From positions 27,094,001 through 27,158,000 of the forward strand of contig OZ281496.1 in NCBI GenBank assembly GCA_965637545.1: 64,000 nt of DNA. The letters are read 5' to 3'. Shown here in pieces: positions 4,984 to 53,200 of the stretch; within the stretch, counting starts at the first letter, position 1, and each line of letters starts with the position of its first letter. The stretch comes from Phallusia mammillata (taxonomy: Eukaryota). The notes below the pieces were generated by a model. That model saw only the letters and a list, made by a program, of their open reading frames with translations, did not search any database and had not been told where the DNA came from. A program made the position numbers and the translations under genes.

Positions 4984-10354
<5,371 letters not shown>

Positions 10355-13245: not shown

Positions 13246-15422
13246 TTAACGGTGGTTGTGCAAAACATGGACGCAAGGGTCTTTACAGAAATGTAGTGCC
13301 AATTCGCTCCACCATGCGTCAGAAAAGGTTTGAAAATTTTCGTCAAACTTGAATATATGATTTGGGTCGTCAGTAATGTCAAGGAATAGCTGGTCATCGA
13401 ACACAACACCATCCCGCTCAAATGCATACACGTACAGCTGTAAAAAATATAAATATGCTATGCTTAGGTATAATTAAAGTTTACATTTAGGCTTGATTTT
13501 ACGTGATATCCCATTTTTTGTGCTACTTTCGCCGCGGCCGTTGCGTCATCGGATGGATTGCTGTCTGTCACGATAAGTATGACTTTTGGAACCCTCTCGT
13601 CTCTCATACCCTTTTCCATGTCTAGAAGGTTGTCCAAAGCGTATTGTATTGCTGCTCCCGTATTGATAAGTGAATCTATCATTAAACACATGGATGATTG
13701 TTGTTGACGCAATGTATTGTTTCATGTTTTAAACTTACCAACTTTGGAAGTTTGCATTCGTTCTTGAAAGATACTCATCATTAGGGTTTTATTGTGTTCG
13801 TACTCGTTAAAGTTAATAACTGACGAGTTGTAAGGTTCAGCTCCATACGATACTCCAGCGAGAAGCGTTGATTCCTCGCCAATATCAATCAATCTAAACT
13901 AACCAGTCGTTACTTGCGTTTGTCGGGTGACTACTTAATACCTGTGGCCTTTACAGGCTCTATAGACTAGGTTAGTGGTTCTCAACTCGTTTTCGGCCAT
14001 GGACCACCGCGCAAGTAAAACTAATATCGTGGACCATTTTATTTTTGAGCAAGATTGAAGTACACATACAAAACTACTATTTGGGCTTGAAACATAATTC
14101 TTTAAAACCGATTTTCCAGAAGTGTGATACAATTATTAACAGCTAACATTTCAATACTCTTTCAATATGTAATATGCAATAATCTCTAGTTTATCGACAA
14201 ACTTAGCGGACGTCCTGTGGACCATCCAAAAAGTCATCATGGACCACTAGTGGTCTATGGACCACCAGTTGAGAACCACTGGTCTAGGTTCAAAGAGTTA
14301 AACGTCTTTCTTACTCTGTGATTGCAAGAAGCACGCGCATAACGATTGAAGCGCTGCTATCTTTGTAGTGGTACAAAACCGCCCAGTCGTGCAACAGATA
14401 TGGTGGACAAGGGCCTAAAATATTGAAAATAGTTTATTTGTTACTGAAAGAAGTTTTACCTATTACATGCGAAGCAAAATGTAGTCCTAGAACTTTTGTG
14501 AGCATTTTGGATTCCATAATGAAATATTTAAATTGTTTCTAACTTCTTTCTGAATAAAGAATAATCAAACCTAATTTTTGTGTGTACATCTCATAAACCT
14601 TACGAGCACAGCATGGTGGATCATATTCCCAGGTGCCGTCAGCTCCACAACCGTTCTGATCTAGTCCTACTGGCCACAGTTCGTAAGTTGGCTCAGTGCA
14701 TTGGTATCTGCAAAGTGAGTTTTCGCAGTGAATGTTTCCATGCGGTAATCTGTTTGGTTGCAGTCGACAGTCATTGAATCCACCTTTTGTACAACAAATA
14801 AAGCCAAGTTCGTTTCCTACTGGAACTGTATTTAGGTTAAAATTTAGTTTAAAAACACCAAGCAGACATTTGTTAGCTTCTATAGTGCTTCTCAGTAAAC
14901 CAACCCGACAAAATTGGGAAAGACACATCAGAGAAGCAAGTGTCAATTCTTGCGTTACACAAATCTCCATCACAGCAACAAGTACAAAATGAGTTGAGTT
15001 GATCTCCATTGCATTGAGTAGATTTGCCTGAAGGCCTATTGTTCTGGAAAAGAAGCATGTAGAAATATAGTTGGGTGTTTTGTTGACTATTTTTCTTTCC
15101 CACCTGTTTTTGGTTGTTTCTGCAGGCCAAGGCCTTCTTGCATCCTTTGCTAACGTACATTTTGTCATTGTGTCGTCTTATTACTGTTTCACAGATGTCC
15201 TAATATATATATATATATATATATGTTTACACATAATGCATTTGACTTGATAAAACTAACACATTAACTTGCCTGAGATCCCTGGCATTGCTGCTCTCCG
15301 TTAAGATTGCATGTTATGAAGCCCAAAGCACTATTACATGTAACACACTTTAGTGACAAAACGGGGGTAAACACAAAAGACAAAATAGCAAAGACGAGCG
15401 ACAGCAAAACTAAATCCTTCAT
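13246..15422 (-). CDS. Array unit 1: secreted Ly6/uPAR - sushi(CCP) - vWA protein, 8 exons, intact
   Basis: MKDLVLLSLVFAILSFVFTPVLS-LKCVTC...; ICETVIRRHNDKMYVSKGCKKALAC; QCNGDQLNSFCTCCCDGDLCN; CRLQPNRLPHGNIHC...WEYDPPCCAR; PCPPYLLHDWAVLYHYK; NTGAAIQYALDNLL...RVPKVILIVTDSNPSDD; VYAFERDG...HFCKDPCVHVLHNHR*. All splice phases are consistent; intron 1 has a GC donor. Confidence 0.88.
13973..14281. mobile_element. hAT-type MITE in a unit 1 intron
   Basis: TIRs tagtggttctcaact / agttgagaaccactg, TSD gactaggt/gtctaggt. It is absent from the homologous sequence at ~19990. Confidence 0.85.
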
Positions 15423-16283
15423 ACTAGCTGACTGTGCTTTCTCATAGTGTTTAGGCTACATAGCACTTTCAAAATCGGCAAAAATGTTTTACACAAAATA
15501 CAGTTGTTGTATGCCCTGGGGTGATTAATACCTGCAGCAAATATGTGTAGTAAATTTCAGATTTTTATGCTCTAAGAACTTCTCTTGCCCCCACTTATTC
15601 TGGCGATTTTTTGGCACTTAGTCTGACGAAGTCTAGTTAAGAGTGTAGTGTTACAACATAAAACATGTCCAACATGTGTTTTTAACCACATCCGGCTAAT
15701 TGCACATGTAACTTGCGTTAAAATATTCTATTATGTGATTCTACGATTCTATTAAATTACCTATGTGCGAGCAAATAGCTTTCTGTGAAATGGGTTTGGC
15801 AGACAGAGTCCAGACCGGTAAAAAATAATTGGTTATCAATTTACATGTCTATGTGAAATCCCAGTATTCTATGATAAGCGCTGCTTTAATTTTTCGTAGG
15901 ACGTGAATAAAGTGGGCGTGTATGTTGTGTAAGTTTGGCCCATGTGATGTGCAGAAACAAATACGCAATGCGTTGCAACTGCTCGGTGTTTCTGTTTATT
16001 TGGGTAACAAAAGACTCTTTCTAGTTTTACGACACTGTTTTGTTGAATTGCAGATACCGAAGTCTAGTCCTTGAAATATAAAATTTCCGCGCTGGTTTGT
16101 TTTGTTTCTTTGTTGTATTTGTTAAAATGTTCATTAGTATATAAAATTCAAATGGAGACAGTGTTAGGTAAATCTGTTTGAGCAAAACTTCTTGTTACAC
16201 AACTAAGACATATAGACTAAGCAATGTGCAATTAGAAACGTGAACCAACACACTCATTGAACAGAAGTCCAGGTATTTCATAT

Positions 16284-19200
16284 TTATGAATGATCGTGTA
16301 ACACGTGTACACACGGGTCTTCGCAAAAGTGGTCAACCAGGTCTTGCCACCAGAAGTCGGGAAACGTTTCAATATTCATGCCGAACTTGAATATATGTTT
16401 TGGGTCGCCGGTAATGTCAAGCAACTGCTCGTCGTCCAAAGTCACTCCGTCCCTTTCGAATGCGTACACGTACATCTACGAGTTATAGTAGAACTAATGA
16501 ATGCAGATCTAGGTTGTCAACGATATATGTTCTGGTATTTACCATCTTTAGTTACTGATTCAAATAGAGTATGTGGGAAAAGCCTGTATACTGGGCGATT
16601 ATAGTCGGACTATGGCATTCTGTAGGCACTGGCCGTAGACCTACATTGATAAAACAATTTATTGAGATGTTTTTCGTTTCTGAAGTAAAAAAAAATGTAG
16701 AGTTTTACAATACTGCTCACGCGTCCTGCTGTAGAACTTTTGCGTAGTTTTTTTTGTGAATTCAAAATGTTTGATGCTGCTTGTAAATGGTAAAATGTTG
16801 TGAGTTAAGGTTGGCGTTAGCCTGTTAACTCACGAGATATCCCAAGTCTCGGGCCCTTTTTGCCGCTGTCTTAACGTCATCGTCTGAGTTGCTGTCGGTT
16901 GTAATGAATATGGCTTTTGGCACTCGTTCGTCCCTCATCCCTTTATCACTCTGCAACAGGTTTTCAATCGCGTACTGAATTGCTGCACCGGTATTGACAG
17001 GAACTCCTAAACAAGGATTGTTCAACAGAAGGACACTTGATCAATTTTCGTTTTGTAATTTTTATAGTTTTAGGCTGAAATCAGGGCAGACTAAAAGCAC
17101 AAGCCCGAAATCTTGTCCAAACTCGATAAAAAATATTTTGCGTCGAAAATTAGTTTGTTGCAAGGTCCGAATCAAGCCTATTTTACTTAAACTTACCACC
17201 ACAAGCCCAAAGCCTGGCTCTACTTATAACTCATGTCGTATTATGCAATGCTGCGCAATTGATTTGTATCACCGAGTGTTAATTTCAATTGAATCTCTGT
17301 CGGAATATGAGTTTTAAACCGTAAGTATTTGTGGAAAGACACAACATAAGTTTTATAGCGTATGTTGCCACACAAACAGGATAGTAAGACTCTACGATAA
17401 CCACCACGTTCATGTACGGATCAGACAATTGGAAATTCTAACCGTTTTCAGTAGGAGTCCTTTTTTCTTGAAAGATTTGCAACATTAGCGTTTTATTGTA
17501 CTCGTAGTCGTTGAAGTTGATGACTGACGATTCGTAAGGCTCTGCACCGTACGACACTCCAGCGAACAATGTAGATTCTGCACTTATGTCAATTATTCTG
17601 AAACAATACGTCATTCTTCATTAAAAATATATCAGTTTTAAAATGTATTATGTAATGCGGTTGAAAGAATTTGAACCTCAGATCAATGTTGTAAGCGGAC
17701 CCAAACTCGACCTGAACCCGAAAGTACAAGTTAGAAATTCGGCCTAAACCCTTCTCGTATTAGGTCCAAAAGTGAAATTAAAATTACCCAGCAATAGAGA
17801 CACAAATTTAAGTTAGGTCCCAATAAAGTCGGTTTGGTTTAAAATAAAATATAACTTACAACTCATGCAGGGCATTCTGCAGTTTACAGAAGAAAAAAAA
17901 TCTATTTGTCGTTATTTGTGCTGCAGTTATCAAATATTAGGTGTACCTGGAAATAGCTTTTGTGTTTAGAAGCTGTACTGACCCGGTAATTGCGGCGAGT
18001 GTTTCCCAACTCTTGACAGAATACTCAGGTTTCGAATGTGACAAAACTATTGAATCGAATAGGGAGTGCGGTGGACAGGGTCCTGTTAATTCAAACAGAT
18101 TATGGAGCAATGATGGGTTTATAACTCTCTTTATTATGAACTAAAAAAGGCTAGTTCGTTAGTAACTACAAATTGAAACTTCCGAGGTTTACCTTTAATG
18201 CAAGGTTTCTGCAGTAATTATTTAAACGCTTAAAATTCTAGCGTCGTTAGGTCAAAAAGAGTTTTTTTTTGTATTGTCAATCGTAAGACAGTTTTGTCTA
18301 TGTATCGGTCTGTAATCCTAGATTATTTACTTTCTTATTCAAATATAATTTATATCTGATCTTTCGGCCAAATTGTTGAGATTTAATTTCATACATATTT
18401 CTTACTGACTGCAGTAAAATATTGCAATATCCGGAGAGCAGTGATCTTCAGATTAAGATCTGCCGAGGTTGAACATCACCTTTATTTAATTTATTTAACA
18501 ATTCTTACGTGCACAACAAGGTGTGTCGAATTGCCAGTTGCCGTCAGCTCCACACACGTTCTGATCTCTTCCTACTGGCCACAACTCATAAGTTTCATCA
18601 GTGCATTGATATTTGCAAACTCCGTTCTCACAGTTGATGATTCCATGTGGAATTTTTCTAGGTGGCGTTGCGCAGTCGTTGAAACCAACTAAAATGTGCA
18701 ATATATGGCTTGGTATTTTGCATAAAACTTACAACAACTTTTTACTAGTTTTAAGATGTGTATGAAGTACTGACGTTGTGGTGATACAGATATGTGTACT
18801 AAGTTTAAACAGGTGTCAGTTCCGACGTTGCACAAATCTCCTTCACAGCAACAAGTACAAAATGAGTTGACTTGGTCTCCATTGCATTGAGTAGATTTGC
18901 CTGAAGGCCTGTTGTTCTGTCAATATATTTATAAACAATTATTTTTACAGAGTTTTTTGCGCCCTTCAGGAAGGCAACAGACGTTTTCTCTTACTTGCAT
19001 TTGGTTGTTACTGCAAGCCATGGTGTCCTTGCAACCTTTTCTAACATACGACTTGTTCTTATACCTTCTTACCACCGCTTCGCAGGAGTTCTGCAAAACT
19101 TTGCCTTTTTAAAAACAGGTTACTAATATTTCCATTCTACTTAACCTGGTTGATATGACATTGTTGTTCTCCTTGGAGGTTGCATTCCTCATTACTTAAG

Positions 19201-19289
19201 GCACGATCACAGGTTATACATTTCAGCCCAGAAGCCACTTGGTGACAACAAGCGAAGGCAACAAGCCAACCCAATGCAACAGTTACCAT
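16284..19289 (-). CDS. Array unit 2: secreted Ly6 - CCP - vWA protein, intact
   Basis: MVTVALGWLVAFACCHQVASG-LKCITC; SCEAVVRRYKNKSYVRKGCKDTMAC; CTCCCEGDLCN; CATPPRKIPHG...WQFDTPCCAR; LFDSIVLSHSK; NTGAAIQYAIENLL; HFCEDPCVHVLHDHS*. Confidence 0.86.
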
Positions 19290-19624
19290 TCTTAAACTTT
19301 TTTTACCCTAGACTGTGATAGACACAGTTCAACGATATAATAGTCAATTTTTGCTCTAGCTAACGGGTCAGTCTTTACTTGCATGCCCCTAGGCGAGAAT
19401 ACGAGAGCCTCTGCGGCACTGGAAACGGAGTTATTCACACAATTTACTAACAATGGAAATTAGTCTAATGGTCCGGCACGCCTGACCCATGTTCAACAAA
19501 AAAACTTGGTCTAGATTCGTCCCCGGGAGAGTTTGAACCCCTAAAAATGCAAGAACATTTTCGTCAGTACAGTCTAAGTTACTGACACAAATACACAATG
19601 TGCTGGTCACAAAAGTCGTGTCTG

Positions 19625-20210
19625 AAATCAGAACCTAAAATTAGTCGTTTGCAGGTCAATTTGTTGTTTTCTGTGATCGTTTAACCGACAAAGTTCATTT
19701 TTTTGCAGCTACTGTTTAGTATTCTAGTTTTATTTCTTTGTGCATGAACAAGAACCACAGACATCGTATCCAAGAACGTCATTTTTTGTTAACGATTTTG
19801 CAGCATTTAGTAAAATAAATCATAAAAATACTTTTTTAAGATAAACACTCTTTTGCCACATCTTCAAGTTAACTTGTTAGAGTTGTAAGTGTACTTGCAG
19901 TTTATTTAAACAATGAGTTTTGTTGCACCAGTTGTTTACTTGTTTTGTCGGGTAACTACTTAACACATGTGTACTTTAGAGGCGCTAGAGAGCTTAGGTT
20001 CAAAGAGTTAAACGTCTTTCTTACTTTGTGATTGCAGGGAGCGCGCGCATAACAGTCGAAGCGCTGCTAGCCTTGTAATGGTACAAAACCGCCCCGTCGT
20101 GCAACAGGTACGGAGGACAAGGCATTAAAATAATGAAAATAGTTTACTTGTTCCCGAAAGGAGTTTTACCTATTTCGTGCTAAGCAAAATGTAGGCCTAG
20201 AACAGGGGTC
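19625..20210 (-). pseudogene. Relic of a deleted array unit (unit-4-like 3' flank fused to a unit-1-like vWA exon 5)
   Basis: 19625-19930 matches the unit 4 downstream flank (24795-25080). 19930-20210 matches the unit 1 intron/exon at 13910-14490. The exon acceptor is mutated (ttttaatgcc vs ttttaggccc). Confidence 0.75.
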
Positions 20211-20753
20211 GGCAACCTTTTAGGCGAAGTGTGCCAATTTACTTGTTATTTCCATGTGTTTATGTCATCGCGTGCCAACGTTTTTCTAAATAATAGTTGT
20301 TCATGCCAGCAGATATCAACAATGCCATGCTTTTCGTAGGAAGCATAAAAACCTTAGCAAATTTATTTTCAACTAACGTGGACTTAAATAAAGTGGGCGT
20401 GCATGTTGTGTAAGTTTGGCCCATGTGATGTGCAGAAACAAATACGCAATGCGTTGGTTGCAACTGCTTGGTGTTTCCGTTTATTTGGGCAACAAAAGAC
20501 TCTTTCTAGTTTTGCGACACTGTTTTGTTGAATTGCAGATACCGAAGTCTAGTCCTTGAAATATAAAATTTCCACGCTGGTTTGTTTTGTTTCTTTGTTG
20601 TATTTGTTAAAATGTTCATTAGTACATAAAATTCAAATGAAGACAGTGTTATGTAAAGCTGTTTGAGCAAATTTGTTGTTACACAACTAAGCAATGTGCA
20701 ACTAAAAACGCGAACCAACACACTCATTGAACAGAAGTCCAGGTATTTCATAT

Positions 20754-23700
20754 TTATGAATGGTCGTGTAACACGTGCACACACGGATCTTCGCAAAAGT
20801 GGTCAACCAGGTCTTGCCACCAAAAGTCAGGAAACGTTTCAATATCCATGCCGAACTTGAATATATGCTTTGGGTCGCCGGTAATGTCAAGCAACTGCTT
20901 GTCGTCCAAAGTCACACCGTCCCTCTCAAAAGCATACACGTACATCTGCGAGTCATAACAGAAATCGTGGATGCAGAACTAGCTTGGTAGATGCTATGGT
21001 CAGTTGCTTACGGCTTTCCTTACTTAGTCAAATATAGTTTGAACGATAAACCTAACTGGGCGGTTATTGTCGGACTATGGCATTTTGTATGCACTTGTAA
21101 ATGTTTTGGATCTAAAAGTAGTTTAATCTTGTTTTGTTGGCCTGTAAAAACGTAAACTTTTACATTATTGCTCAGGTAGACGTACGCGTCCTGCTGAAAG
21201 ATTTTTGTTTAGGGTCTATTATTTAAAATAAAATTATTGCTGCTGGTAATTTGTAAAACATTGTGCGCCATAAGTTGATGTTGTCATTTGCTTGTTGACT
21301 TACCAAATATCCCAAGTCTCGGGCCCTTTTTGCTGCTGTCTTAACGTCGTCGTCAGAGTTGCTGTCAGTTGTGATGAAAATGGCTTTTGGTACTCGTTCG
21401 TCCCTCATTCCTTTATCACTCTGCAGCAGGTTTTCAATCGCGTACTGAATTGCTGCACCGGTGTTAACAGGAACTCCTAAACAATCAAGGATTGTTTAAC
21501 AAAAAGGCCATACGAACGATTTCGTTTCGTAATTTTTATAGTTTTAGGCTGAAATCAGGGCAGACTAAAAGTACCAGCCCGAAACCTATTCAAACCCGAT
21601 AAAAATATTTTGCGTCGAAAATTATTTTGTTGTCAGGCCCAAATCAATACTATTTTACTTAAACTTACCCCCAACCCCGCCAGTAAAACCTTGCTCTACT
21701 TATACACCGTGTTATACAATGTTGTGAAATTGCTTTGTATCACCGAGTGTTAATTTCAACTACACCTATTTCGTGGAAAAACACAACACAACACAACCCG
21801 GTAATAAGTTTTATAGCATATAGTCTTATTAAGGATAATAAGACTTTACGATAATGCCACGACGTTCATATGCAAATCAGACAATTGAAAATTCTAACCG
21901 TTTTCAGTAGGAGTTCTTTTTTCTAGAAAGAGTTGCAACATTTGCGTTTTATTGTACTCGTAGTCGTTGAAGTTAAAGACTGACGACTCGTAAGGCTCTG
22001 CGCCGTATGACGCACCAGCGAACAATGTAGATTCTGCACTTATGTCCAGTAATCTAAAACAATACATCATTCTTCACTAAAAATAAATCAGTTTAAAATA
22101 CATTGTGAAATACAACTTGAAGCCTTGACTTAAAGTTGTACGGGGGCCCGAAACCGAAAGTACACAGCCTCGAAATCCGGGCTAAACTAATTTTTCACAT
22201 TGTTGTAAAATGAACTTTACGTAACAAAAACAGGAGACTATTTGATGCAAAAAAATAAAGTCTAGTTTGAACTGAAATCCACCTACAGTAGCAGTTTTCC
22301 GGTTATTACTGTTCTCTACATCAATACAATTCAAAACCCAGTGTATAAACACTAGGCCAAACAGAATCAACCGTTGTACACAATAGTTTTACGGAATATA
22401 TATTTCACCAAAAAGTTTTGGCACCTTCAGTTCACTGTTTGATGTAGTTTTGTTTTGCAATTGAAAACAATTTAAGCGTACTTGAAACTATGTGTTTAGA
22501 AGCTGTACCGACCCGATAATTGCGGAGAGTGTTTCCAATCTCCTGTCAGAAAACTCAGGTTTCGAATGAGACAAAACTATTGAGTCGAAAAGGAAGTATG
22601 GTGGACAGGGACCTGTTAAACCAAACAGATTATGAAGCAATGATGGGTTTACAAATCTCTTTATCGTAAACCAAATAAAATGGCTTGTTATGTATAAATT
22701 ACAAACTGAAACTTCTTGGATTTAACGTTAATTCAATTTTTCTGCTGTGGTTATTTGAATACTTAGGTTACTGTTTGTATCTAACGTCGTGTTTTTACAC
22801 TGACGCGCGGTTGTTATATCACGTCAAAAAGTAAGCTTTTTCGTATTGTAATTAGTCCACAGCAGTATCTATTATTTAGACGGTAATTTGGTAACTGCAG
22901 TAAAATATTGTAATTTTGGGAGAGCACTGATCGTCAGATAAAGATCTCTCAAATTCAACTTATCTTATAGCTCTTACGTGTACAGCAAGGTGTGTCATAT
23001 TGCCAGTTGCCATCAGCTTTACATCTGTTCTGATCTCTTCCTACTGGCCACAGGCCATAAGTTTCATCAGTACATTGATATTTGCAAACTCCATTTTCAC
23101 AGTTGATAGTTCCATGTGGAAAGTTAGTTGGTGGCGTTGGGCAGTCGTTGAAGCCTACTACAATGTGCAAGTATACGGCTTGGTATTTAGCGAAAGTCAT
23201 ACAACTAAATTTTATTAGTTTTAATATGTACATGAAGCACTGACTCTTTGGCGATGAAGAGACGTGTACTAAGTTTAAACAGGTGTCAGTTTTTTGACTA
23301 ATGTTACATACTTTAATACGTCGGTTTTTCTTGACAGAAATGTTGCAATTTGCAACCAAGTACTGCAGGGCAATACAGATTTGATCGGGGAGCAGTATTT
23401 CAATACTACACCAACCTATCGGTGATGTGGGGACAGATAAAGCGGGAGAACAGTTGTCAAGTCCAGTGTTGCACAAATCTCCTTCACAGCAACAAGTACA
23501 AAGCGAGTTGACTTGGTCTCCATTGCATTGAGTAGATTTGCCTGAAGGTCTGTTGTTCTGTCAACAAACAAATAGTTTTGACAGAGTTTTTTGGCACCTT
23601 TCAGGAAAGCAACAGACGTGTTCCCTTACTTGCATTTGGTTGTTACTGCAAGCCATGGTGTCCTTGCAACCTTTCCTAATATACGACTTGTTCTTGTACC

Positions 23701-41955: not shown

Positions 41956-42849
41956 TCAGTTTTTGGGGCCTTCGCTCCCACCGAACGGCGAAGTAACAAT
42001 TGTTTTCCATGTTTCGTAGGTCAGCAAAACGGCCATGAGGTTCGCCGTAACATCAAGTCCGTAAATTGACAGTGGAATCTTTCTGCTTGATTGGGGAAGG
42101 TACTTGTTCACAATAGCCGCAGCAGCGTCCGTCAAAACGCAGATGAGAGTTGTAATTGTTGTGCGTTTTACGATAGACAGGCTAGCTCTGCTTCCATGTC
42201 TTTGCTTAGCGCAATGGAACGGATATAAGAGCAGGAAAAGCATTAACGCTTGACCGATGGCATTAACCGATGTAGCGACAAGGGCAGGCCAAGCGATGTA
42301 GTCGCCCTTGTAACGGCAGCCGCACGCGGTGTGTTCATATGTGTTAAGCACGTTGAAGATTATCCCAGAAAGATGTTGACCCACGACCATCATTATAATA
42401 CTGCTATAACTCAATACTTTAATCAATGTATTTTTAAGGTGCTGAAGTAGCGGGCTCTGATACAACGTCGCTTGTTTGGTCCATAGAAAAAAGTACACCA
42501 GAGAGTTTGAAGTTACCAGTAGTTCTATCGAAATTTTTACCACAACGTTGCACATGGTGGTTTCGCCAGGTAAGAAACCTACGTTGACGACCACTAGAAT
42601 ACTGATAAGAAACGCTAGGACCGATACTGCTGCTACAGAGGCCAGTCGGTAAAGCACATAGCCGCCGTTACTCTTCGAAAACTTTTGGTGTTTTAAGCCG
42701 TAGAACAGGAAAGAAATGAATACCCACGTTGAAAGCATAATACACATGCTGCTTATTACTATCGCACCGATCCATTTTGGCTTTTCGTAGCGTTCCATAT
42801 GTCGTATTTTTAAAGGACTTCTAGCCATCGTGTTGTTTGCAGAGTTCAT
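41956..42849 (-). CDS. Intronless orphan 7TM (GPCR-like) protein A, 297 aa
   Basis: True ATG at 42849 (MNSANNT; the ORF-track start is a GTG). Seven hydrophobic segments, N-terminal N-glycosylation sequon, Cys at the top of TM3 and in ECL2. TM3 end is VYFFLWTKQATLY (no DRY). Confidence 0.8.
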   Translation of the reverse strand: MNSANNTMARSPLKIRHMERYEKPKWIGAIVISSMCIMLSTWVFISFLFYGLKHQKFSKSNGGYVLYRLASVAAVSVLAFLISILVVVNVGFLPGETTMCNVVVKISIELLVTSNSLVYFFLWTKQATLYQSPLLQHLKNTLIKVLSYSSIIMMVVGQHLSGIIFNVLNTYEHTACGCRYKGDYIAWPALVATSVNAIGQALMLFLLLYPFHCAKQRHGSRASLSIVKRTTITTLICVLTDAAAAIVNKYLPQSSRKIPLSIYGLDVTANLMAVLLTYETWKTIVTSPFGGSEGPKN

Positions 42850-44247
42850 TGTTCTTTTTAAACAATACACAACGGTTAATTTCTGTTACAGCCCCAGAGA
42901 AATTGAAACAATAAATACAATTTAAACCTAAAGTAAGTTAAAACTTGTCTGATTTAAATTTGAAAGAGAAATGTTTCTGCAACTTTATTATCAAATTGAT
43001 AAAGTTACGACGCTTTCTCTCCTAATTTGGGAGCAACAAACTTGCTGGTGTTACTGATCATGTATTATATTTCTTGTGATAAGAACTTACGAAAATTCTA
43101 AATCTTCCAGTGACTTGTGCTTCCTTAATGGAAAATACTGTTCTAAGTTGTGTTACAAATAGGATCATATGCACTGCTAAAAAACAACTCTTTTAAATGT
43201 GTTGTATCGTTAAAGAACGACATTTTAGAGAATTATATCATCAAATTGTCAATTTCCATACACTTTGGATTCTTATTCCTTCTTGCTTGACAAATATATA
43301 TATATTATCTGCAAGCACTATGAGACTTTATAGAAGCAATCCTTTGTACAAGGCATTACACTGCGTACTGCTTATGCCATAACAACCCTAAGCCATAAAT
43401 ACACTTGGCTTTTGCTGTAATTTGTTACAAATCAGCGGACATTTTGACTTCCCAGGACGCGTTCTGGAAAATACCTTTTCATCACACACCGTGTTTTTAT
43501 GACACACGCTAGGCCATGCGAACACAGTGATGAAATTGTTTAGAAGTGCTGACTCTGATCATGAAGCACTTGGTACTTGGAAATAACGGCTTAGACTTTG
43601 AAACACCAACTGCTTTGCGCGAAACTGTCGGAACTTGATCATTTAACTAGCAAGCAATAACCGCAGTACAAAAACCCCAACTATAGTCATTACTCTTATA
43701 CGCATCCTAAAGCAGTAGTAGGAAATTTTGTTTATCCCCGTTTAGACTTCGTTTATGAAGAGTTTTTCTCACGCCTTTGAGTTGTTTTTCTTTCATACGC
43801 GCCCTAAATTCTTGCATTTTAGACACGTATGCAAATATTTCTTTAAAATATCAAACTGTATGTTATTAGCCGTTTTGTCAAATTGCTTGTTAAGTATTTT
43901 AAATGATTTTTCTAGCTCTTTGTTTTTGAACGCGATTACAGATTTGAAATTTTAGCGTTTTGAAATTTACTGGGTATAAACACCATGCCAAAGCCAATGA
44001 CCTTCTATCAGCGTTTTCTCCTTCGTTTTCTCGATAATTCTGAAAACAAAGTTGGCTATTTGTGAGCAAAAACGCTGTCCCACAAACAAAATTTGAATAG
44101 ATTATAGGCAGCCAAGCATAGCCGCTCTTGGGTAGTCTCTCAAACGTTTCAGTGCTTTTTGTAGAGCCATGACCAATGTGCAAGTTTAATGTTGACCAAT
44201 TTTTTTACACAATATTGTATTTGGTGCGACGATGAAAGAAACGAGTT

Positions 44248-47151
44248 TTAAAGTTCATGGTCGTGCAAAGCATGGGCACATGGATCTTGGCAGAAATGTT
44301 CTTGTAGGTCCTTCCACCATGTGTCCGGAAAACTGTCAAAATTCTTTCCAAACTTGAATATATGTTTCGGGTCGCCGGTGATTTCCAAAAATCGATCATC
44401 ATCAAAGACTACTCCTTCCCGCTCAAACGCGTACACATATATCTGTGTGTATGAAAGAGTTAGTTTTGAATACCTTGTTTGCATGATTGCTATGGGTAGA
44501 GCATGTGGCACGCTTGCCAAGGTTGGCATTTGAGGTGATTTTTCATGGCATGTTTATATTAAAGTGCTAATTCAAAGTGTTACATTGCTTGTTATCATTG
44601 GTCAATCATTTAATCTTAAAATCTAGCTGACACGCACATATATCTGCTTTCTGTTCACCACTGATATTAGTTGGCACAAACCATAAAAATGTTGCCACGC
44701 GAAGTCATTACAACATAAAAATAACAAGTAAATTGACAAGCGTCGCGTAAAAGGTTGCCGACCCCTGCATGGTGTAAAATTTTGCATGGTGAAGAAAAGT
44801 GTGTGCGCTTGGAGTTTAACAACTCATGATTTTAGCCGCAGCTTTTGCTACCCCGTTATATGACTGGGAACAGCAATATTACTTACAACGCGAAAACGAC
44901 CGTTTTGGTTTTGATAAAGTGAGTTTGCTGAATAGTTGTTTATAATTTATCGCAAATGGGAAATCAAACATTGGTTACAAGAGTTTAATGAAACTATTAT
45001 GTGAACTTACGATGTAACCAAGGTTGCGAGCGTTTTCCGAAGCAGTTTGGACATCATCGTCTGGGTTGCTGTCAGTAAAGATTGAAATTGTTTTCGGCAC
45101 TCGATGGTTTCTCATTCCGAGTTCGGGTCTGAACATATTGTCTATTGCGTACTGGATCGCAGCGCCCGTGTTGACAAGTGTTCCTGAAACAAAACACGCA
45201 AGTCACTTAAAAACGGTTTGCTATTGCTATTCTAGTCTTTATTATGTGCTTGTTTATTGCTTTGCGTACTGCAGCAGCTGTGTGTTATGTTGCAACATTT
45301 TTAGCATGGCTAAAGCTGCTGCCAAACCAAGCAAACACAGTGGTTAACGACACACCAGCTATTATCTCAGAAAATCGAAAGAATATTGTTCTATTTCTTA
45401 AACCCACATCAGGACTGTCTACAAAATTTGTATTGTCCAAGTTTTCTGTATGTGGCGAAATGAACCATTTTGTTCATATATCAGGAAAGCAAATCAGAAA
45501 AGAGTGACATACATCAGCAAAGGGTGACAATTATACTTACAAAAGCGCCGAAGAGTCAACCCTAAAACAACATGACTTACCATCCTGAAAGGTTTGCAAC
45601 CGTTCTCCAAACAGTATGCCGTAGGAATTTATATTATACCCATCCTTAAAGTGAATCACTGATGACTCAACAGGCTCATAGCCGAAAGACAATCCTGCCA
45701 AAATGGTGGATTCTGGACCAACATGGACCGATCTGTATAACACGTTAAACAACAATTAAAGGTTGCAAAAAGTTTGAGCTAAGTGCGTAACGCATTTTAT
45801 TCATTTTTTTAAAACAAAGCATTCTGTTGCCAGAATGTGGCAAAACTTACCCCATAATTTCAGTTAAAGTCCGAATAGCGTTTTCAATGCTACCAGGTTT
45901 GAAGTGATACAAACTGAGAGAATCGTATAGGACGTATGGTGGACAAGGACCTGTAAAGCACACATGGTGTATTTTCCAAGTGAATATTCATTACTAAAAA
46001 TTAACACTTTGCTTACGTGCGCAGCAAGGTGTGTCATATTGCCAGTGGCCGTCAGCTCCACACACATTCTGATCTCTTCCTGCTGGCCATAACTCGTAAA
46101 TTGGTGAAGTGCATTGATATCTGCAAACTCCATTTTCGCAGTAGATTTTTCCGTGTGGAAAACTCTGTGGTGGTGCTGGGCAGTTGTTATGTCCGACTAA
46201 GAAACAAAGTAATTGTTGGTAACGAACGCTGCTCTACTCAGACCAGCGGTTTCCCAAACCTTTACTAGATGGAGTTTCATTGTTAATATAGAAGCCGTTT
46301 GAATTTTACAAATTAAATTATATGGATGGTGCTTGTGGGAAATAAGGGGAAAGCACAGTAAAACAAATTAACCTTGTAGAGATGTGGGGACAGATATAGG
46401 AAAAATGCAGTTGTCAAGTCCAGTGTTGCACGAATCCCCTTCACAGACACAAGTACAGAACGAGTTGACTTCATCTCCATTGCATTTAGTAGATTTGCCT
46501 GAAGGCCTGTCGTTCTGCAACAAACCAATTACATTATTGAAAAGAACAATAGGACGGAGCTATGCTGGAGTGTGTTTCTTTCGACGTATAAAAGTAACGC
46601 ACTAGATTGTAGCAGCATTACAATAACCACTTACAAACAATTTGCTTCACATTTTGTTGACACATGTCTTCAAGTCTATTTCAATGATTTCCTAAGTACA
46701 ATCTTTTTTACTTTGCATCAATACGTCCATTTTCCATCTAATAATTCATTCTAGCACAAATATCTTTAGATATTTACCGGCATTGGGTAGTTTCTGTGAG
46801 GTTTCGGATTTTTGCAGCCTTTGCTTATACGCAACTGGTTATTGTATCTTCGTATCACTGTTTCACATAAGTTCTGCGAAATCAAAGGGCCGTAAACAAA
46901 TATTGCCACTGAAAAACGGTAGTTAACATTTACATAAATTTTATGTGCTGTTTAAATTATCAAAATAGTTTATGATGATTTACATTACGTATTGCACAAT
47001 TGAAATCACTTACTTGATTTTCCATACATCGTTGTTTTCCTTCTAAGTCACATGTCTCAAAGCTCATAGCATTTTTGCATGTGATGCATTTCAGAGCTGT
47101 AACGCTTGCAATAGCGTAAGCAACAAATATACTTACAATCCAGAACTTCAT
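44248..47151 (-). CDS. Array unit 8: secreted Ly6 - CCP - vWA protein, intact, lacks one Ly6 disulfide
   Basis: MKFWIVSIFVAYAIASVTA-LKCITC; LCETVIRRYNNQLRISKGCKNPKPHRNY; CTCVCEGDSCN; CPAPPQSFPHG; LYDSLSLYHFK; HFCQDPCAHALHDHEL*. Confidence 0.87.
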
Positions 47152-48220
47152 AGTAGATTTTTTACGCAGTCTTTTGATTCTGTCAACTCAACTGTCTAGG
47201 ATGTGTATATATATTTCTGAGTTGTTTTCACAAGACCTGCCTCTTGGGCACAGCGCACAAATATTTACACGTTTGTAATCAACGACAGTGGTAAACAGCT
47301 TCTAAACCATTGTTTGTTGCGGTGTGTATCCTAAACATAAAACCTGGACTTACTCAAATCTCTTACTTCGCCCTGGTTCAGTCGAAAATACGTCTGTCAA
47401 GTATTTGCATGTATTTTGTAATTTATTAAATTTCGAACGCACCCTGTTCTAATTAAGATGTGCTACACCATACATGTTCAATTCATACATAGTTAACACA
47501 TTTCCTACATACAGTTTGTTACAACCAGGTTGCAGTTGTAATCGTTATAACCACGTTTGACTGCGTTAAAATTTTTGTTGTCGTTTAAATTACGATATTT
47601 TCTCTCCACGAAATTTATCCAAATTTTTGCTGCAAGTATTAAAAACAATTTGTTTATTTACCCTACTGTCATCAATGTGCGAAATAACGTTCAAACTTCA
47701 CATATCATACGCTAGTAGAACAGTGGTGATGTTACACTACGCAGATGAAAAAAAGTTTACAAGGTGAAAATCTGACAGAAAGTTACAACGCATATTAAAT
47801 TTGTAGCTATTGGGGGGACTATCCAAACAACCGGCATATTTCCACAAATTAATAATGACTTAAACCCGCACTGCTTTTTTACCTTATGAACGTGCATGTA
47901 TATGTCAATCCGTTCTTTTGCCCTTTCGACCAGGTCTATCGACCCTACACAGTGTCACGATAAACACAAAACACTATCCTTTTAAACGGTTGCCTCAACG
48001 TTTTCTGCTCGTTCAACAGTATGGAAAATGGTTCATTGCGTAAAAAGCAACATTGTATTGTATGTTACATGGTTCCATTTTTTTTATCTTACAGATTTAT
48101 TTTAGTGTTTGCGAAACGAATCAAGTACTCAAGCGAAATGACAAGCAAGGTCCTTTCGTTGTAGATTTTCAAATTAAACACCATCTATTTTTCTTTGGTA
48201 AGCATGTTTCAACTCAGGAC

Positions 48221-49150
48221 CTATGCTTGTGCATGAGTCAATCGTCTGAGACCAATTGAATTTCTTTGATCACTCCTCTTATTAAAAGGCGAAATAAGTA
48301 TCGACCGCCATGTCTCATATGTTAGCAGAACAGCAGTGAGATTGGCCGTAGCACTTAGTCCAAATATTGATAATGGAATATGTCCTCCTATGTCTTGAAA
48401 GATACCGTTCAAAACACAAGCGACAGCGTCTGTTACAACGCAAATCAATGTTGCAACTGTTGTGCGTTTTACCATGCCCATACTGGTTTCAGTTTCACGT
48501 CTTTGCGTCGAGCAATATAACGGATACATAAGAAGAAAAAGCATCAATCCTTGTCCTATGGTGTAAAGGGATGATCCAAAAAGGACAGGCCATATATGGT
48601 AATGGTCCACAGAATTACAACCGAATTCAGTCACTGCAAATTTGTTAACCAAATTAAAAGCTATGGCGGAAGCGTGTGTCCCGAAAACCACAAGAACAAT
48701 GCTGATGTAACCTACAATTTTAATCCATCTATGCTGAAGGTGTTCAAGCGTCGGAATTTGATATACAGTTGCTTGCCTTTTCCATAGGAACAGATAAACC
48801 AGAGAGTTTGATGTGGTCAATATTTCCACCGAAAGCTTTGTGTGGATATTGCAAAACTCACTTTCGCTTGTGGTAAACTCTACAAGAAACATAAAGGGAA
48901 TGCAAAGGACAAAAGCGAGGACTGATGCTCCAGCCGCAGTTGCCATTGAGTACAAAACAAATCCATCGTTTCTTCGTGAGAATTTACGGTGTTTAAACCC
49001 ATAGCAAAGCGCAGATGCAAATACCCACATTGAAAGTGGAATACACACACTACTTATCACAACTGCTGCAATCCATGGCGCTTGTTGATGGCGAATGTCT
49101 GAATGAAATTTAATCATACCTTCGTGCGTTGTGTTGTTTACTATCTTCAT
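48221..49150 (-). CDS. Intronless orphan 7TM (GPCR-like) protein B, 309 aa, paralog of protein A
   Basis: ATG at 49150. Shares motifs with protein A: WI.A.VISS.C, TSNSLVY.FLW..QAT.Y, IGQ.LMLFLL.YP, VKRTT..TLICV.TDA, IPLSI.GL..TANL.AVLLTYETW. Confidence 0.83.
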   Translation of the reverse strand: MKIVNNTTHEGMIKFHSDIRHQQAPWIAAVVISSVCIPLSMWVFASALCYGFKHRKFSRRNDGFVLYSMATAAGASVLAFVLCIPFMFLVEFTTSESEFCNIHTKLSVEILTTSNSLVYLFLWKRQATVYQIPTLEHLQHRWIKIVGYISIVLVVFGTHASAIAFNLVNKFAVTEFGCNSVDHYHIWPVLFGSSLYTIGQGLMLFLLMYPLYCSTQRRETETSMGMVKRTTVATLICVVTDAVACVLNGIFQDIGGHIPLSIFGLSATANLTAVLLTYETWRSILISPFNKRSDQRNSIGLRRLTHAQA

Positions 49151-50241
49151 TGTGCTAGTATTCTAATTTGTCCTGTTATAATCTTTCACGTTAATAGCGT
49201 TGTCTGTACTTTGCATGCAAAAAGGCAAAACGTCTATCAAAATACAAAATAAATAACTTTTCAGGTTTAATGACTTTAATGACTCGTAACGAAACAATTC
49301 CGCAAGTCTTTTTGTAATGTAACTCTGCCTGGCTGTTTAGAGTAAGTTTTGGGATATTTACAAAAATGTGCTTATTTTCCACCAGACAACTTATTTAATG
49401 CAGCATATCTGTTGTTGCTTAGTACTGTATCATTTCTTCACAAAAACATTGTCTCACTTGGTTTACTTCTTGTACAAAACTTTCAAATAGCAAAGTAGGC
49501 TACACGCCTTTTACTTTAAAAGGACTTTCCGTCTAAGCCATTCACGTTGGACTGATATATACTACGTGCTGTTCATTTAAAAAAAAATATGGTTTGCCCT
49601 TTACCTTCCGCCTCATTTCTGCCTGCTATTGTCAATCAAACAGACATTGATTTAAGCTTCCTTGCGATCCATGCTCCGTAATCTGCGCTTTTGCTCTTTT
49701 GCTTGGGCTTAAGGGTTTTACCTAAGTGACAGAATCAAATGCAATCGTTTTGACACGATTTCCATCTTGCTGATAAATAGTGCCTACAGGACAAGGCCAC
49801 CTAACCATCCTGAAGTTCCGCGCAACAGACAATTTAAACTACAAATATACTGTGTATGCCATCTTATAACAAATAATTTTTCATTACAGGAACTGACAGG
49901 ATATACTCGCGTTCAACTAATTTAAACCAAATCTTTGCCCCATATTGTCGTTTTTGTAAAATCCCAATGACTTCCCGTCGTTTCTTTGACTGTTCTTATA
50001 AAATATCCGTATGCTGTGAGTTTAGCTATTCTTTTGACACTTAATAGCATGTGTGTTGATATAGTCGCACAACCATAGAAAACGTGTACTCCACTTTTAA
50101 CACCAAACTTACATTTTAAAAATTAAACAAGTTTGCGACGCAAATATTGCAAAGTTGAAATTCAACCACAAATAAAACAGCGCCTTTTCTGAAAAAAGTT
50201 AGCCCTGCTGCCGGCTGTTTAGTTTTCATTTTTATCAAGAT

Positions 50242-53200
50242 TTAGAGGAGATTGTCATCGTGTAAAACATGAACGCAAGGATCAGAGCAAAAATGATCCA
50301 CCATGTCTTGCATCCAGGGTGCCGTAAAGTCCTCCGTGAATTCACCAATCTTAAAGATGTGTTTTGGATCGCCAGTGATGTCCAACAGCTGCTGATCATC
50401 ATACACAACTCCTTCCCGTACATATGCATACACGTAGACCTTAATGAAATGTTAGTGTTAAAATAAGGTAGGTTTATTTCGCTTGGAGAAAAACGACATA
50501 GCGTCACAATTGTACTCAAAACTATCACCAAGCGAAAATATCTGCGTTACGTTGAAACAATATTGAGTGCAAAATAGTTAGGTTTGGTTTGTGTGCTTGG
50601 TTGGCCGACTGGTGTAAAAACGAAAGACGGCATACAGTAATTTTTATAAGTGTCCCCTTGTGTTAAAGGTTTTAGTAAATGAGATGCTTTGGGTTCATTT
50701 GTTGCGAAATTGGAGAATGGAGGATCAATATGGGCGCCTGCAGAAAATTTGACAAAAAAAGAAACAAAGAATCTAGGGCAAATTTATGAATCATGCATAC
50801 TTACGGGGAAGGATTACGATTTTAAGTAATTATTTACATGGTTATAAATTGTATACAGTAGTATTGCGTTGCATAAAACCTAAAAAACATTCTGCCTAGG
50901 AAAAAATTGCGACGTACCATGGTACGCATTCAGTCTGTCGAAAATGCAACAAAACGACAAACCTTTTGAAAACGACACCAGAAACGTTAATAAGACAGGC
51001 ACAGTTAAACTCGCTTGGTTAGTCATATACGGACTTTTTCTACACCACTTTTTAAAGCGTGATACTTTTACTTTCATCAGGTTTTGACAACATTGGTAAT
51101 TTGGAAGTACATTTAAATTTCAAGGGGGAATTGCTCCTTTATACTGTATCGACAATTGACAGTAACTTACTAAATATCCCAAACTTCTTGCGTTCTCAGC
51201 TGCAGTCTTGACGTCATCATCTGAATTGCTGTCAATCACAATAGAAATCGATTTCGGCACGCGGTTGTCTCTCATACCAAGCTCGGACTTAAGTATGTTG
51301 TCCACTGCGAACTGGATTGCAGCGCCTGTGTTGACTGGACCTGCGAAGAAATCAATCAGTCGTTTAAATATTTACTGGTGCATGTGTTACATTTTTATTT
51401 TGGCATCGTTGTTTGAAGTCATAAATACAATTCTATGTTACGTCGCTGTAGCGAATTATTGAAAAGACTTGGCCCCACAAGGCTTTGAAACAGACAGTTA
51501 GAGTTTGAATTGGATGTAAATTGGGGTTGTTTTGGGTGTGTTATATCTATATCTGAATAACATCCACGTTTAAGACCACAAAATTATATTTGGTTCCTTA
51601 AATGGGACTGAAAGGCACAGCACAGCTTACAACCTTGTCCAACGTTTAATGCGCTACAAAACAAGTAGGGAATCATTGCTTTATTTTGTGGAGTTAAGTT
51701 TTTTACCTTGATCGGCAGCTTGCAGACGTTTTCTTGCCAGTTGAGAATACAAAGTTCCGTTATATTCGTAGTCGTTGAAATTAATAACTGAAGCCACATG
51801 AGGTTCGGATCCGTACGACAAAGCCGCAGCCAGTGATGAATCTGGTCCGACGTGGATGGATCTAATTCAAAATCGTTGGTTTACGTTAAAACTTATACTC
51901 CTATACATATTTTGCAACAAAATATTTATTTATTTTTAATATATTTATTGCATGAGCGGCTTTCGAAGCTTACTTCATAAGTTCCGATAGAACGCTGAAC
52001 ATTTCCTCGAAAATTCCAGATTTAAGGTGGTAAAGACTAACATCATCGTAAAGAGCGTATGGTGGGCAAGGTCCTTCAAAAATAAATATATTGGTAATAT
52101 TTAATTGAAACGTCTATCGCCAGAACTGTCAGGCAATCGCGTACTAACTTACTATTTAATTGGTGCGCATATTTATTTATTTATTTTTGAGCAAAAAAAT
52201 CGAGCCAGTATATTTGTGTAGAACGTCAGATGTCATCGTCGACAATAGCACTTCGAAACGTAGTTATGTTCTACACAAATATACTGGTTCTGATTTTTTG
52301 CTCAGATTATTCAAAGCCGTGAACAGTGTACCTACTTTTTTTTGTTCGGTAAAAGCATTGTGCTGTTTGCGTGGTTATTTGACTTCTCAAAGCCATTTTT
52401 CGTGCATACTGTACAGTGTACACTAAGGCACAACCGCGATTGTGGCTATAAATGTTTCTATTTCTTTACACTAAAAACTATAAATGCGACGTACTTGCAC
52501 AACAAGGTGTATCGTATTGCCAGTTGCCGTCGGCTCCACACACGTTCTGATCTCTTCCTACAGGCCACAGCTCATAAGTTTCATCAGTGCATTGATATTT
52601 GCAAACTCCGTTTTCGCAGTTGATGTTTCCATGTGGAAATCTCGTGGGTGGTGCTTGGCAATTGTCATGTCCGACTGAAAAACAAAGAAATGTTGTTTGT
52701 GACTCATGTTATGCTGTAATCTGTCGGTAACGTATATATATCTTGATAGAAATGTTGCAATTTGCTGCCAAATACTGCGGATCCATACTACGGGAAGCAG
52801 TATTTTAATACTACACCAACCTATCGGTGAAGTGGGGACAGATACTGTAGAAGGGCAGTTGTCAATTTCAGCGTTGCAAGAATCTCCATCACAACAACAA
52901 GTACAAAACGAGTTGACTTGATCTACATTACATTGAGTAGATTTGCCTGAAGGTCTGTTGTTCTGTCACAAAACAATAACAAGTGTAAGAAAAATACTTA
53001 TTAACGTACATGAAGTGTTTTCTAAATCATTTACCTGCTGTTGGTTATTGTTGCAGGACATGGCTTGCTTGCAACCTTTGGTTACGTAAATCTTGTCCAT
53101 GTATCTTCTTACTACTGTTTCACATGCATTCTGTTAAAATACGGAACAGGTCAAACTGTTACAATGAAAAGCATAGAATAGCCCTTACATTGTTTCATGT

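What the first reader, a model, noticed from the sequence alone, without database searches (positions are those of the whole stretch)
14300..52075. vWA MIDAS DxSxS replaced by an invariant H-x-K in all nine paralogs
Seen: six residues after the beta-1 Asp, exactly where the MIDAS Asp lies, every copy has His, with Lys two residues later. The variants are HYK (unit 1), HSK (2, 3), HFK (4-8) and HLK (9). The downstream MIDAS Asp (TDS/IDS) is kept in all nine copies, and the MIDAS Thr (NTG) in all but unit 4 (NIG). Known: DxSxS+T+D binds Mg/Mn in integrin I and factor B vWA domains. Inference: invariance amid high divergence argues for a re-purposed site rather than decay, either a His/Asp transition-metal site or a Lys acting as a built-in cation.
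Basis: partly seen in the sequence, partly recalled or inferred. Interest (0 to 1): 0.7.

Follow-up and report, generated by a model that had tools for sequence, protein, structure and literature searches.

The report
Metal-site-less vWA domains with fixed His/Lys
Nine tandem sea-squirt genes for small secreted proteins carry an adhesion-type (vWA) domain whose usual magnesium-binding site has been rebuilt: a histidine that is an old hallmark of this sea-squirt gene family, plus a lysine that only this gene cluster has, both kept by selection, and most likely making the site work without a metal.

Summary
The sequence facts hold. All nine minus-strand genes (three-finger + sushi-like + vWA; unit 7 is spliced and abundant in RNA-like contigs) read D-x5-H-x-K in their fifth exon. 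A tenth, decayed lone exon at 20024-20143 also reads HYK. A structure model of a Ciona relative and its superpositions on integrin I domains put the His on the MIDAS Asp and the next-but-one residue on the first MIDAS Ser.

Two corrections:
- The Thr of NTG is not the MIDAS Thr. That position lies two residues earlier and is Val or Ile in seven units, Thr only in units 5 and 6. Only the beta4 Asp of the five canonical ligands is kept in all nine.
- H-x-K is not conserved in relatives. In 14 family members from Ciona, Phallusia and one other run, His is present in 11, Ser/Thr sits at the Lys position in 11, and Lys in none.

His is therefore an old family hallmark and Lys a change fixed in this array's founder. 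Synonymous sites between paralog lineages are saturated, so both residues are under purifying selection.

Best reading: a metal-free remodelled MIDAS with Lys pairing the retained Asp. This is inferred, not shown. A His/Asp metal site is unlikely.

The scan had already noted the His hallmark in another cluster of this genome.

The parts
13249..53657 (-). Tandem array of nine genes (units 1-9). Each has 8 exons: signal peptide + three-finger (Ly6-like) domain (E1-E3), sushi-like domain (E4), vWA domain (E5-E8). Unit 5 lacks E1-E3.
   Evidence: Exon families by all-vs-all blastp; splice sites; RNA-like contigs for unit 7.
14315..14414 (-). Unit 1 exon 5 (beta1 + former MIDAS loop + alpha1): ..LLHDWAVLYHYKDS..; His 14368-14370, Lys 14362-14364.
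17983..18082 (-). Unit 2 exon 5: ..DSIVLSHSKPE..; His 18036-18038, Lys 18030-18032.
22513..22612 (-). Unit 3 exon 5: ..DSIVLSHSKPE..; His 22566-22568, Lys 22560-22562.
   Evidence: donor placed by hand at GTCGGT
26460..26559 (-). Unit 4 exon 5: ..DAVGLYHFKTS..; His 26513-26515, Lys 26507-26509 (AAG).
31555..31654 (-). Unit 5 exon 5: ..DSVGLYHFKRG..; His 31608-31610, Lys 31602-31604.
35484..35583 (-). Unit 6 exon 5: ..DSVGLYHFKAR..; His 35537-35539, Lys 35531-35533.
39341..39440 (-). Unit 7 exon 5: ..DFVTLYHFKPD..; His 39394-39396, Lys 39388-39390. Exon borders seen in RNA-like contigs.
45851..45950 (-). Unit 8 exon 5: ..DSLSLYHFKPG..; His 45904-45906, Lys 45898-45900.
51974..52073 (-). Unit 9 exon 5: ..DDVSLYHLKSG..; His 52027-52029, Lys 52021-52023.
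20024..20143 (-). Relic lone copy of exon 5 (..DGAVLYHYKAS..) between units 2 and 3. Acceptor AG lost. Part of a segmental duplicate of the unit 1 exon 5 region.
   Evidence: 87.6% identity over 209 nt to the unit 1 region
13503..13675 (-). Unit 1 exon 7: L-I-NTG (Ile at the true MIDAS-Thr position) and V-TDS (retained beta4 Asp).
16834..17006 (-). Unit 2 exon 7: P-V-NTG, T-TDS.
21304..21476 (-). Unit 3 exon 7: P-V-NTG, T-TDS.
25607..25779 (-). Unit 4 exon 7: P-V-NIG, T-TDS.
30368..30540 (-). Unit 5 exon 7: P-T-NTG (Thr present at the true MIDAS-Thr position), I-TDS.
34056..34228 (-). Unit 6 exon 7: P-T-NTG, I-TDS.
38466..38638 (-). Unit 7 exon 7: P-V-NTG, V-IDS. Pfam VWA 40.4 bits on this exon alone.
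45011..45183 (-). Unit 8 exon 7: L-V-NTG, F-TDS.
51171..51340 (-). Unit 9 exon 7: P-V-NTG, V-IDS.

Best explanation
Each unit encodes a secreted three-finger + sushi-like + vWA protein of a family seen so far only in ascidians. Its vWA domain belongs to the collagen VI/matrilin branch and has a remodelled, most likely metal-free MIDAS.

The five canonical ligand positions now read:
- Position 1 (Asp): His, an old family hallmark.
- Position 2 (Ser): Lys, a change fixed once in the founder of this array.
- Position 3 (Ser): variable.
- Thr position: Val or Ile in seven units.
- beta4 Asp: kept everywhere.

Both His and Lys have been held by purifying selection in seven old paralog lineages.

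Inferred mechanism: the Lys ammonium group occupies or neutralises the pocket beside the retained Asp, and the His adds a hydrogen bond. The top face of the domain is thus kept folded and charge-balanced without Mg2+ or Mn2+. Any ligand binding on that face would be metal independent, as in collagen VI N-domains and VWF A3.

Shown: positions, conservation pattern, selection, fold. Inferred: the Lys-Asp contact and the absence of metal.
For: - Fold and branch: Pfam VWA on exon 7. The best solved relatives by sequence are collagen VI alpha3 N-domains. The AF2 model of Ciona relative P0081:184-391 has pLDDT 90.3. VIA-align gives Z 22-23 to collagen VI N2/N5, integrin alpha1/alpha2 I domains and PTMP1.
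- Position: beta1 of the model is D10-H16. Alignment starts are 1ido 8<->132, 1aox 6<->141 and 1zon 7<->128, which put His on D140, D151 and D137 and the +2 residue on S142, S153 and S139. The MAFFT register with 70 canonical domains agrees.
- Rarity: among 595 non-family vWA domains from the best hits, position 1 is D in 568 and H in 2. Position 2 is S/T in 579 and K in 0.
- Family pattern: 14 relatives have His 11, Asn 2, Tyr 1 at position 1, and S/T 11, A, G, H at position 2, with Lys 0.
- Selection: dS is above 2.4 or undefined between seven lineages, with dN 0.27-0.44. Synonymous codon variants occur at both residues.
- Derived state: Lys is one of only three array-specific fixed differences in the domain.
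- Single origin: the array is one side of a branch in an exon-7 tree (73/61; eight units 93/88).
- Precedent: most collagen VI VWA domains lack a conserved MIDAS, and VWF A3 binds ligand elsewhere (PMC3919171).
Against: - No H-x-K protein was folded, because the spliced protein has no reference and was left out.
- The tools return no coordinates, so the Lys-Asp distance is not measured.
- The AF2 model used an alignment in which MAFFT had already put His under Asp, so model and alignment are not fully independent.
- Profile methods (hhalign, Pfam) do not reach beta1, and they imply a 3-4 residue shorter alpha1.
- A retained Asp plus His could still hold a transition metal.
- Relatives with His-x-Ser plus Asp have no Lys, so Lys is not needed for the fold.
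Confidence: 0.5

Rival explanations
1. Tethered-cation ligand site. The Lys ammonium group stands in for Mg2+ and directly binds an acidic residue of the ligand. The domain would then recognise integrin-type ligands (Glu/Asp) without a metal. His and Asp would position the Lys.
For: - Lys sits exactly at a metal-ligand position on the ligand-binding face.
- It is invariant under saturated dS.
- The residues just after it and the N-terminal half of the domain are highly variable (exon 6 has 4 of 51 invariant columns), as expected around a diversifying binding surface.
Against: - No ligand is known and no geometry is available.
- The same data fit a purely internal salt bridge.
- Relatives do without Lys.
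Confidence: 0.18
2. Re-purposed transition-metal site. His and the beta4 Asp, with water or with Thr in units 5 and 6, bind Zn, Cu, Ni, Fe or V instead of Mg or Mn.
For: - His is conserved across ascidian genera (11 of 14 relatives, plus 9 of 9 units) and the Asp is kept in all nine units.
- A canonical MIDAS in a structural neighbour, PTMP1, can hold zinc (title of entry 4cn9).
Against: - Only two plausible ligands remain.
- The Thr position is Val or Ile in seven units, and the fifth position is variable.
- A cationic Lys in the pocket should disfavour a metal cation.
- In other members the Asp is Asn (P0153; L004, L006, L007; another cluster of this genome per note s1-395771), so the His/Asp pair is not a conserved unit.
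Confidence: 0.12
3. Dead site with fold-only constraint. The MIDAS simply decayed. His and Lys are kept only because they pack well at the end of beta1, and the function lies elsewhere, for example on another face, as in VWF A3.
For: - The invariant residues cluster on beta1 (L, D, L, H, K), a core element that is conserved in any vWA.
- Some family members replace His by Asn or Tyr.
- The C-terminal half of the domain is the best conserved part (35% and 29% invariant columns in exons 7 and 8).
Against: - A surface-loop Lys at the start of the beta1-alpha1 loop is not a typical core residue, yet it survived in all seven saturated lineages.
- His at this position is rare in other vWA domains (2 of 595) but dominant in this family.
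Confidence: 0.2

Closest known systems
Collagen VI alpha3 N-terminal vWA domains (N5: 4igi/4ihk; N2: 6snk)
   Same: - Best sequence hits of the exon 7 profile.
- Best structural matches of the relative's model (Z 22.5-23.2).
- Same 'GxR..VPK..TD..S.DDV' core.
- Like most collagen VI vWA domains, no conserved MIDAS (PMC3919171).
   Different: - A single vWA domain behind a three-finger and a sushi-like domain, with no collagen helix.
- A specific, selected His (and here Lys) at the former metal site rather than assorted replacements.
- A Cys-rich C-terminal tail, HFCxDPCxHxxH.
Integrin alpha I domains (alphaM, alpha2, alphaL, alpha1)
   Same: - Same fold (Z 20-22).
- beta1 Asp, beta1 end and beta4 Asp superpose in register.
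- The 'AIQYA' helix alpha3 motif resembles alpha2.
   Different: - Integrins keep all five MIDAS residues (PMC4237329).
- Here D->H and S->K. The second Ser is variable and T->V/I in seven of nine units.
- Only the beta4 Asp is kept throughout.
VWF A3 (and A1) domains
   Same: Structural neighbours (Z about 21.5) that work without a MIDAS metal. A3 binds collagen through another site (PMC3919171).
   Different: VWF A domains are not known to carry a His/Lys pair at these positions (from memory, not tested). The domain context also differs.
Uncharacterised ascidian three-finger-sushi-vWA proteins (Ciona intestinalis XP_078484189.1, XP_002125201.1, XP_009862474.1; C. savignyi H2ZPS8, H2YTD1, H2YH32; three Phallusia mammillata proteins)
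   Same: - Same architecture and length (about 385-396 aa).
- Same 'CCARPCPP' junction.
- His at MIDAS position 1 in 7 of 8, Val at the Thr position, same C-terminal tail.
   Different: - They keep Ser/Thr where the window array has Lys.
- Database names (matrilin-like, MUP-4-like) are automatic.
- No paper was found by accession.

Membership tests
vWA domain (Pfam PF00092) | Profile HMM match above the curated cut-off | tested here: met
   Exon 7 of unit 7 alone scores 40.4 bits against a cut-off of 23.8, on profile positions 75-135. Full-length relatives score 34-67 bits.
vWA domain (Pfam PF00092) | Rossmann-like alpha/beta fold with a central parallel sheet | tested here: met
   AF2 model of relative P0081:184-391, pLDDT 90.3 and pTM 0.89. 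VIA-align Z 20-23 over 170-185 residues to many solved vWA domains. Tested on a Ciona relative (33-57% identical to the window exons), not on a window protein.
MIDAS-bearing vWA / integrin I-type domain | D-x-S-x-S at the end of beta1 | tested here: not met
   H-x-K-x-(S, E, E, S, G, R, D, G, G) in units 1-9.
MIDAS-bearing vWA / integrin I-type domain | MIDAS Thr (first Thr after GG, alpha2 T221) | tested here: not met
   Val in six units, Ile in unit 1, Thr only in units 5 and 6. Numbering from PMC4237329.
MIDAS-bearing vWA / integrin I-type domain | Asp at the end of beta4 (TDG) | tested here: met
   TDS or IDS in all nine units. The model has D124 right after strand 117-123.
MIDAS-bearing vWA / integrin I-type domain | Binds Mg2+/Mn2+ | not testable with these tools
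   Needs protein biochemistry or a structure.
Collagen VI / matrilin proteins | vWA domains joined to a collagen triple helix (collagen VI), or to EGF repeats and a coiled coil (matrilins) | tested here: not met
   The 391-aa unit 7 product consists of signal peptide, three-finger, sushi-like and one vWA domain, and ends 8 residues after the last Cys. Only the vWA domain is related.
Ascidian three-finger-sushi-vWA family (unnamed) | Shared architecture, CCARPCPP junction, His at MIDAS position 1, HFCxxPCxHxxH tail | tested here: met
   Alignment of all window exons with eight Ciona and Phallusia proteins. Sushi passes the Pfam cut-off in four relatives. The three-finger match is only weak (Toxin_TOLIP 17.4 bits, below the cut-off, in P0154).

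The most novel reading that the evidence does not exclude
The Lys is a tethered substitute for the MIDAS metal. Its ammonium group, positioned by the conserved His and the retained beta4 Asp, would directly clamp a carboxylate of the ligand. This array would then have evolved metal-independent, integrin-style acidic-residue recognition from a His-x-Ser ancestor.
Probability: 0.15. Interest if true: 0.6.

Novelty: new variant of a known kind. Interest (0 to 1): 0.38.

Why it matters
vWA domains without a MIDAS are common, but they are usually treated as having simply lost the site. Here the replacement residues are themselves selected. One (His) has been kept across ascidian genera. The other (Lys) has been kept in all nine copies of one old, highly expressed gene array. 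That gives a defined natural series (D-x-S, H-x-S, H-x-K, and H..N in a sister cluster) for asking how a metal site is converted into a metal-free one. It also gives a handle (H and K mutants) on the unknown function of an unstudied, abundant, secreted sea-squirt protein family.

Tried and rejected
- Word-index search with a stop-free stretch covering exons 3-4 found nothing. The search with the family alignment plus window exons found no new members. No full-length protein of the window's species is therefore available.
- The exon 5 profile alone finds no vWA in the PDB.
- hhalign of family against canonical domains (probability 99.7) starts only after the MIDAS loop. Pfam VWA covers relatives only from profile positions 20-33. 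The His = Asp equivalence therefore rests on the multiple alignment, the model's secondary structure and the start points of structural alignments, not on a profile alignment.
- Model coordinates are not exposed, so no distances could be measured.
- RNA contigs were laid only on 38000-43000. Expression of the other eight units was not tested.
- Neutral inheritance of Lys was rejected because dS is saturated.
- A His-Ser-Asp 'triad' reading for the relatives and a carbamylated-Lys metal centre were considered and dropped for lack of any support.
- In the exon 7 tree one outgroup row (P0152) was cut from the wrong place and should be ignored.
- Paper searches by accession, run id and domain words found no study of the family.


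Full report
**What is there**

The window looks eukaryotic: 38% G+C and short ORFs. On the minus strand, between 13249 and 53657, lie nine units made of the same eight conserved exon blocks.

RNA-like contigs from four public runs of the same coded organism lie on unit 7. They show seven CT..AC joints, which are GT..AG on the minus strand. After the two '+1' shifts, the eight exons give one open frame of 391 aa with canonical splice sites throughout. Word depth is in the hundreds to thousands, so unit 7 is transcribed and abundant in those samples.

The homologous splice sites are canonical in all nine units for exons 4-7. Unit 5 has no exons 1-3.

The product has these parts:
- A signal peptide.
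- A Cys-rich three-finger-like region (exons 1-3, CTCCCxGDxCN).
- A sushi-like domain (exon 4). Pfam Sushi is weak in the window but above the cut-off in four relatives.
- A vWA domain (exons 5-8). Exon 7 alone scores Pfam VWA 40.4 bits.
- A tail, HFCxDPCxHxxH.

**The observation**

Exon 5 reads PCPPYxLxDxxxLxHxK in every unit: HYK, HSK, HSK, HFK (five units), HLK. Its invariant residues are P, C, P, P, L, D, L, H and K.

A tenth copy at 20024-20143 (HYK) is a lone relic exon. It is 87.6% identical to the unit 1 exon region and has lost its acceptor.

TDS or IDS is present in all nine units. NTG is present in eight and NIG in unit 4.

**Is His at the MIDAS Asp position?**

Sequence profiles do not reach this segment:
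- The exon 5 profile finds no vWA in the PDB.
- hhalign of family against canonical domains starts after the loop.
- Pfam covers relatives only from profile positions 20-33.

Three other lines agree with each other.

1. In a MAFFT alignment with 70 canonical collagen-type vWA domains, the family's D and H fall without gaps on the invariant D1 and D7 of DIVFLVDGSxS. The K (S/T in relatives) falls on S9.
2. An AF2 model of the Ciona relative P0081:184-391 has pLDDT 90.3 and pTM 0.89. Strand beta1 spans D10-H16, a three-residue loop follows, and alpha1 starts at residue 20. The full-length model agrees.
3. VIA-align superpositions (Z 20-23) start at a constant offset in many entries:
   - alphaM: model 4, 6, 7, 8, 9 on residues 128, 130, 131, 132, 133.
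   - alpha2: model 6, 7, 8 on residues 141, 142, 143.
   - alphaL: model 7 on residue 128.
   - This puts H16 on D140, D151 and D137, and residue 18 on S142, S153 and S139. These are the published MIDAS residues (PMC4237329).

Two caveats apply. The model was built from the same alignment, so lines 1 and 2 are not independent. The equivalence also assumes no gap within beta1.

**The Thr is mis-assigned**

The MIDAS Thr of alpha2 is T221 in G217-G218-D219-L220-T221, and that of alphaM is T209 after G207-R208. It is the first Thr after the GG.

In the canonical set the motif is GGG-T81-N-T83-G. The family's x-N-T-G aligns x with T81. That residue is Val in six units, Ile in unit 1, and Thr only in units 5 and 6.

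The NTG Thr equals T83, the first residue of helix alpha3 in the model.

The fifth MIDAS position (second Ser) is S, E, E, S, G, R, D, G, G in units 1-9. Only the beta4 Asp of the five canonical ligands is kept in all nine units.

**Relatives**

A profile of the nine exon 7 sequences was searched against 1.84 billion representatives. Most hits were giant multi-vWA matrix proteins. The search also found proteins of the same architecture:
- Ciona intestinalis and C. savignyi.
- Phallusia mammillata.
- Single-exon fragments from one Logan run, DRR090687. Its contigs carry further fifth exons and have no nucleotide similarity to the window.

Across these 14 sequences:
- Position 1 is His in 11, Asn in 2 and Tyr in 1.
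- Position 2 is Ser/Thr in 11, plus one each of Ala, Gly and His. It is never Lys.
- The Thr position is mostly Val.
- The beta4 Asp is Asn in several (P0153, L004, L006, L007).

Among 595 non-family vWA domains from the same hit list, position 1 is Asp in 568 and His in 2. Position 2 is Ser/Thr in 579 and Lys in 0.

His is thus an old hallmark of this ascidian family, and Lys is peculiar to this array. A note of this scan on another cluster 1.36 Mb away (s1-395771) reached the same view of the His. I found it after my own result.

**Constraint**

The nine vWA domains are 49-63% identical, apart from units 2/3 (91%) and units 5/6 (71%).
- 25% of vWA columns are invariant overall.
- Only 9 of 79 columns are invariant in the variable N-terminal half where H and K lie.
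- Nei-Gojobori dS, summed exon by exon, is above 2.4 or undefined between the seven old lineages, with dN 0.27-0.44.
- Both codons show synonymous variants.

An unconstrained codon would not have survived in all lineages, so both residues are under purifying selection.

Lys is one of only three columns that are invariant in the array yet differ from the outgroup.

An exon-7-only tree puts the nine units on one side of a branch (73/61; eight of them 93/88). DRR090687 H-x-S genes are the nearest outside rows. This fits a single Ser/Thr-to-Lys change in the founder, but support is weak because only 57 columns were used.

**Mechanism**

Canonical Mg/Mn binding is very unlikely with one of five ligands left and a hydrophobic residue at the Thr position.

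The closest branch, collagen VI N-domains, mostly lacks a MIDAS, and VWF A3 binds its ligand elsewhere (PMC3919171).

My preferred reading (0.5) is a metal-free pocket in which the Lys ammonium group pairs with the retained Asp and His adds a hydrogen bond. This rests on geometry known from integrin MIDAS sites, where the first Ser and the beta4 Asp both touch the metal. It is an inference.

One pattern in the family is suggestive only: Lys occurs together with Asp in this array. Elsewhere in the family the position is Ser or Thr and the Asp is either kept or replaced by Asn.

The rivals are:
- A tethered-cation ligand clamp (0.18).
- A fold-only dead site (0.2).
- A His/Asp transition-metal site (0.12), disfavoured by the neighbouring cation and the loss of the other ligands.

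**Limits**

- The spliced protein of a window unit was never sent to a search or folding tool. No H-x-K domain was therefore modelled.
- The organism is coded. Earlier notes call it a sea squirt, which fits the relatives found.
- No paper on the family was found.

Noticed in passing
window 20024-20143 (-): Lone relic copy of exon 5 (HYK) between units 2 and 3. It is 87.6% identical to the unit 1 exon 5 region over 209 nt and has lost its acceptor AG. It is a trace of a segmental duplication that also produced units 2 and 3 (dS 0.32).
   Followed up: partly
window 55005-55130 (-): Lone partial exon-8-like stretch (..HYCQNPCVHVLHEH..) beyond unit 9. It may be the remnant of a tenth unit.
   Followed up: no
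window 41956-42870 (-) and 48221-49150 (-): Two paralogous intronless ORFs (304 and 309 aa) with several hydrophobic segments lie between units 7/8 and 8/9. They have no significant Pfam match, and the first has zero coverage in the four RNA-like runs in which unit 7 is abundant.
   Followed up: partly
window 29555-32243 (-), unit 5: Unit 5 has exons 4-8 with intact splice sites, but no exons 1-3 (signal peptide and three-finger domain) were found upstream of it.
   Followed up: no
window 46778-46873 and 46374-46514 (-), unit 8: Unit 8 has lost two cysteines of the three-finger region: KGCKNPKPHRN instead of KGCKNxxACxNN, and CTCVCEGD instead of CTCCCxGD.
   Followed up: no
window exons 5-8 of all units: Conservation is strongly uneven within the vWA domain. 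Exon 6 (beta2-beta3-alpha2) has 4 of 51 invariant columns, against 20 of 57 in exon 7 and 19 of 65 in exon 8. Besides Lys, only Gln in AAIQ[YF]A and Tyr in LGY are fixed in the array yet differ from relatives.
   Followed up: partly
window 41069-41362 (-): In run X1 one contig reads straight through intron 1 of unit 7 (a retained intron or genomic DNA). The other three runs show the spliced form.
   Followed up: no
L004, L006, L007, L008 (Logan run DRR090687) and P0153: In other family members the beta4 Asp is replaced (TNR, TNT, TNV, YKA). The last canonical MIDAS residue is therefore not universal in the family either.
   Followed up: partly
window 7110-8952 (-) and 61050-62312 (+): Flanking genes: exons resembling an AAA+ FtsH/AFG3-type protease on the minus strand, and BIR (IAP-like) repeats on the plus strand.
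   Followed up: no
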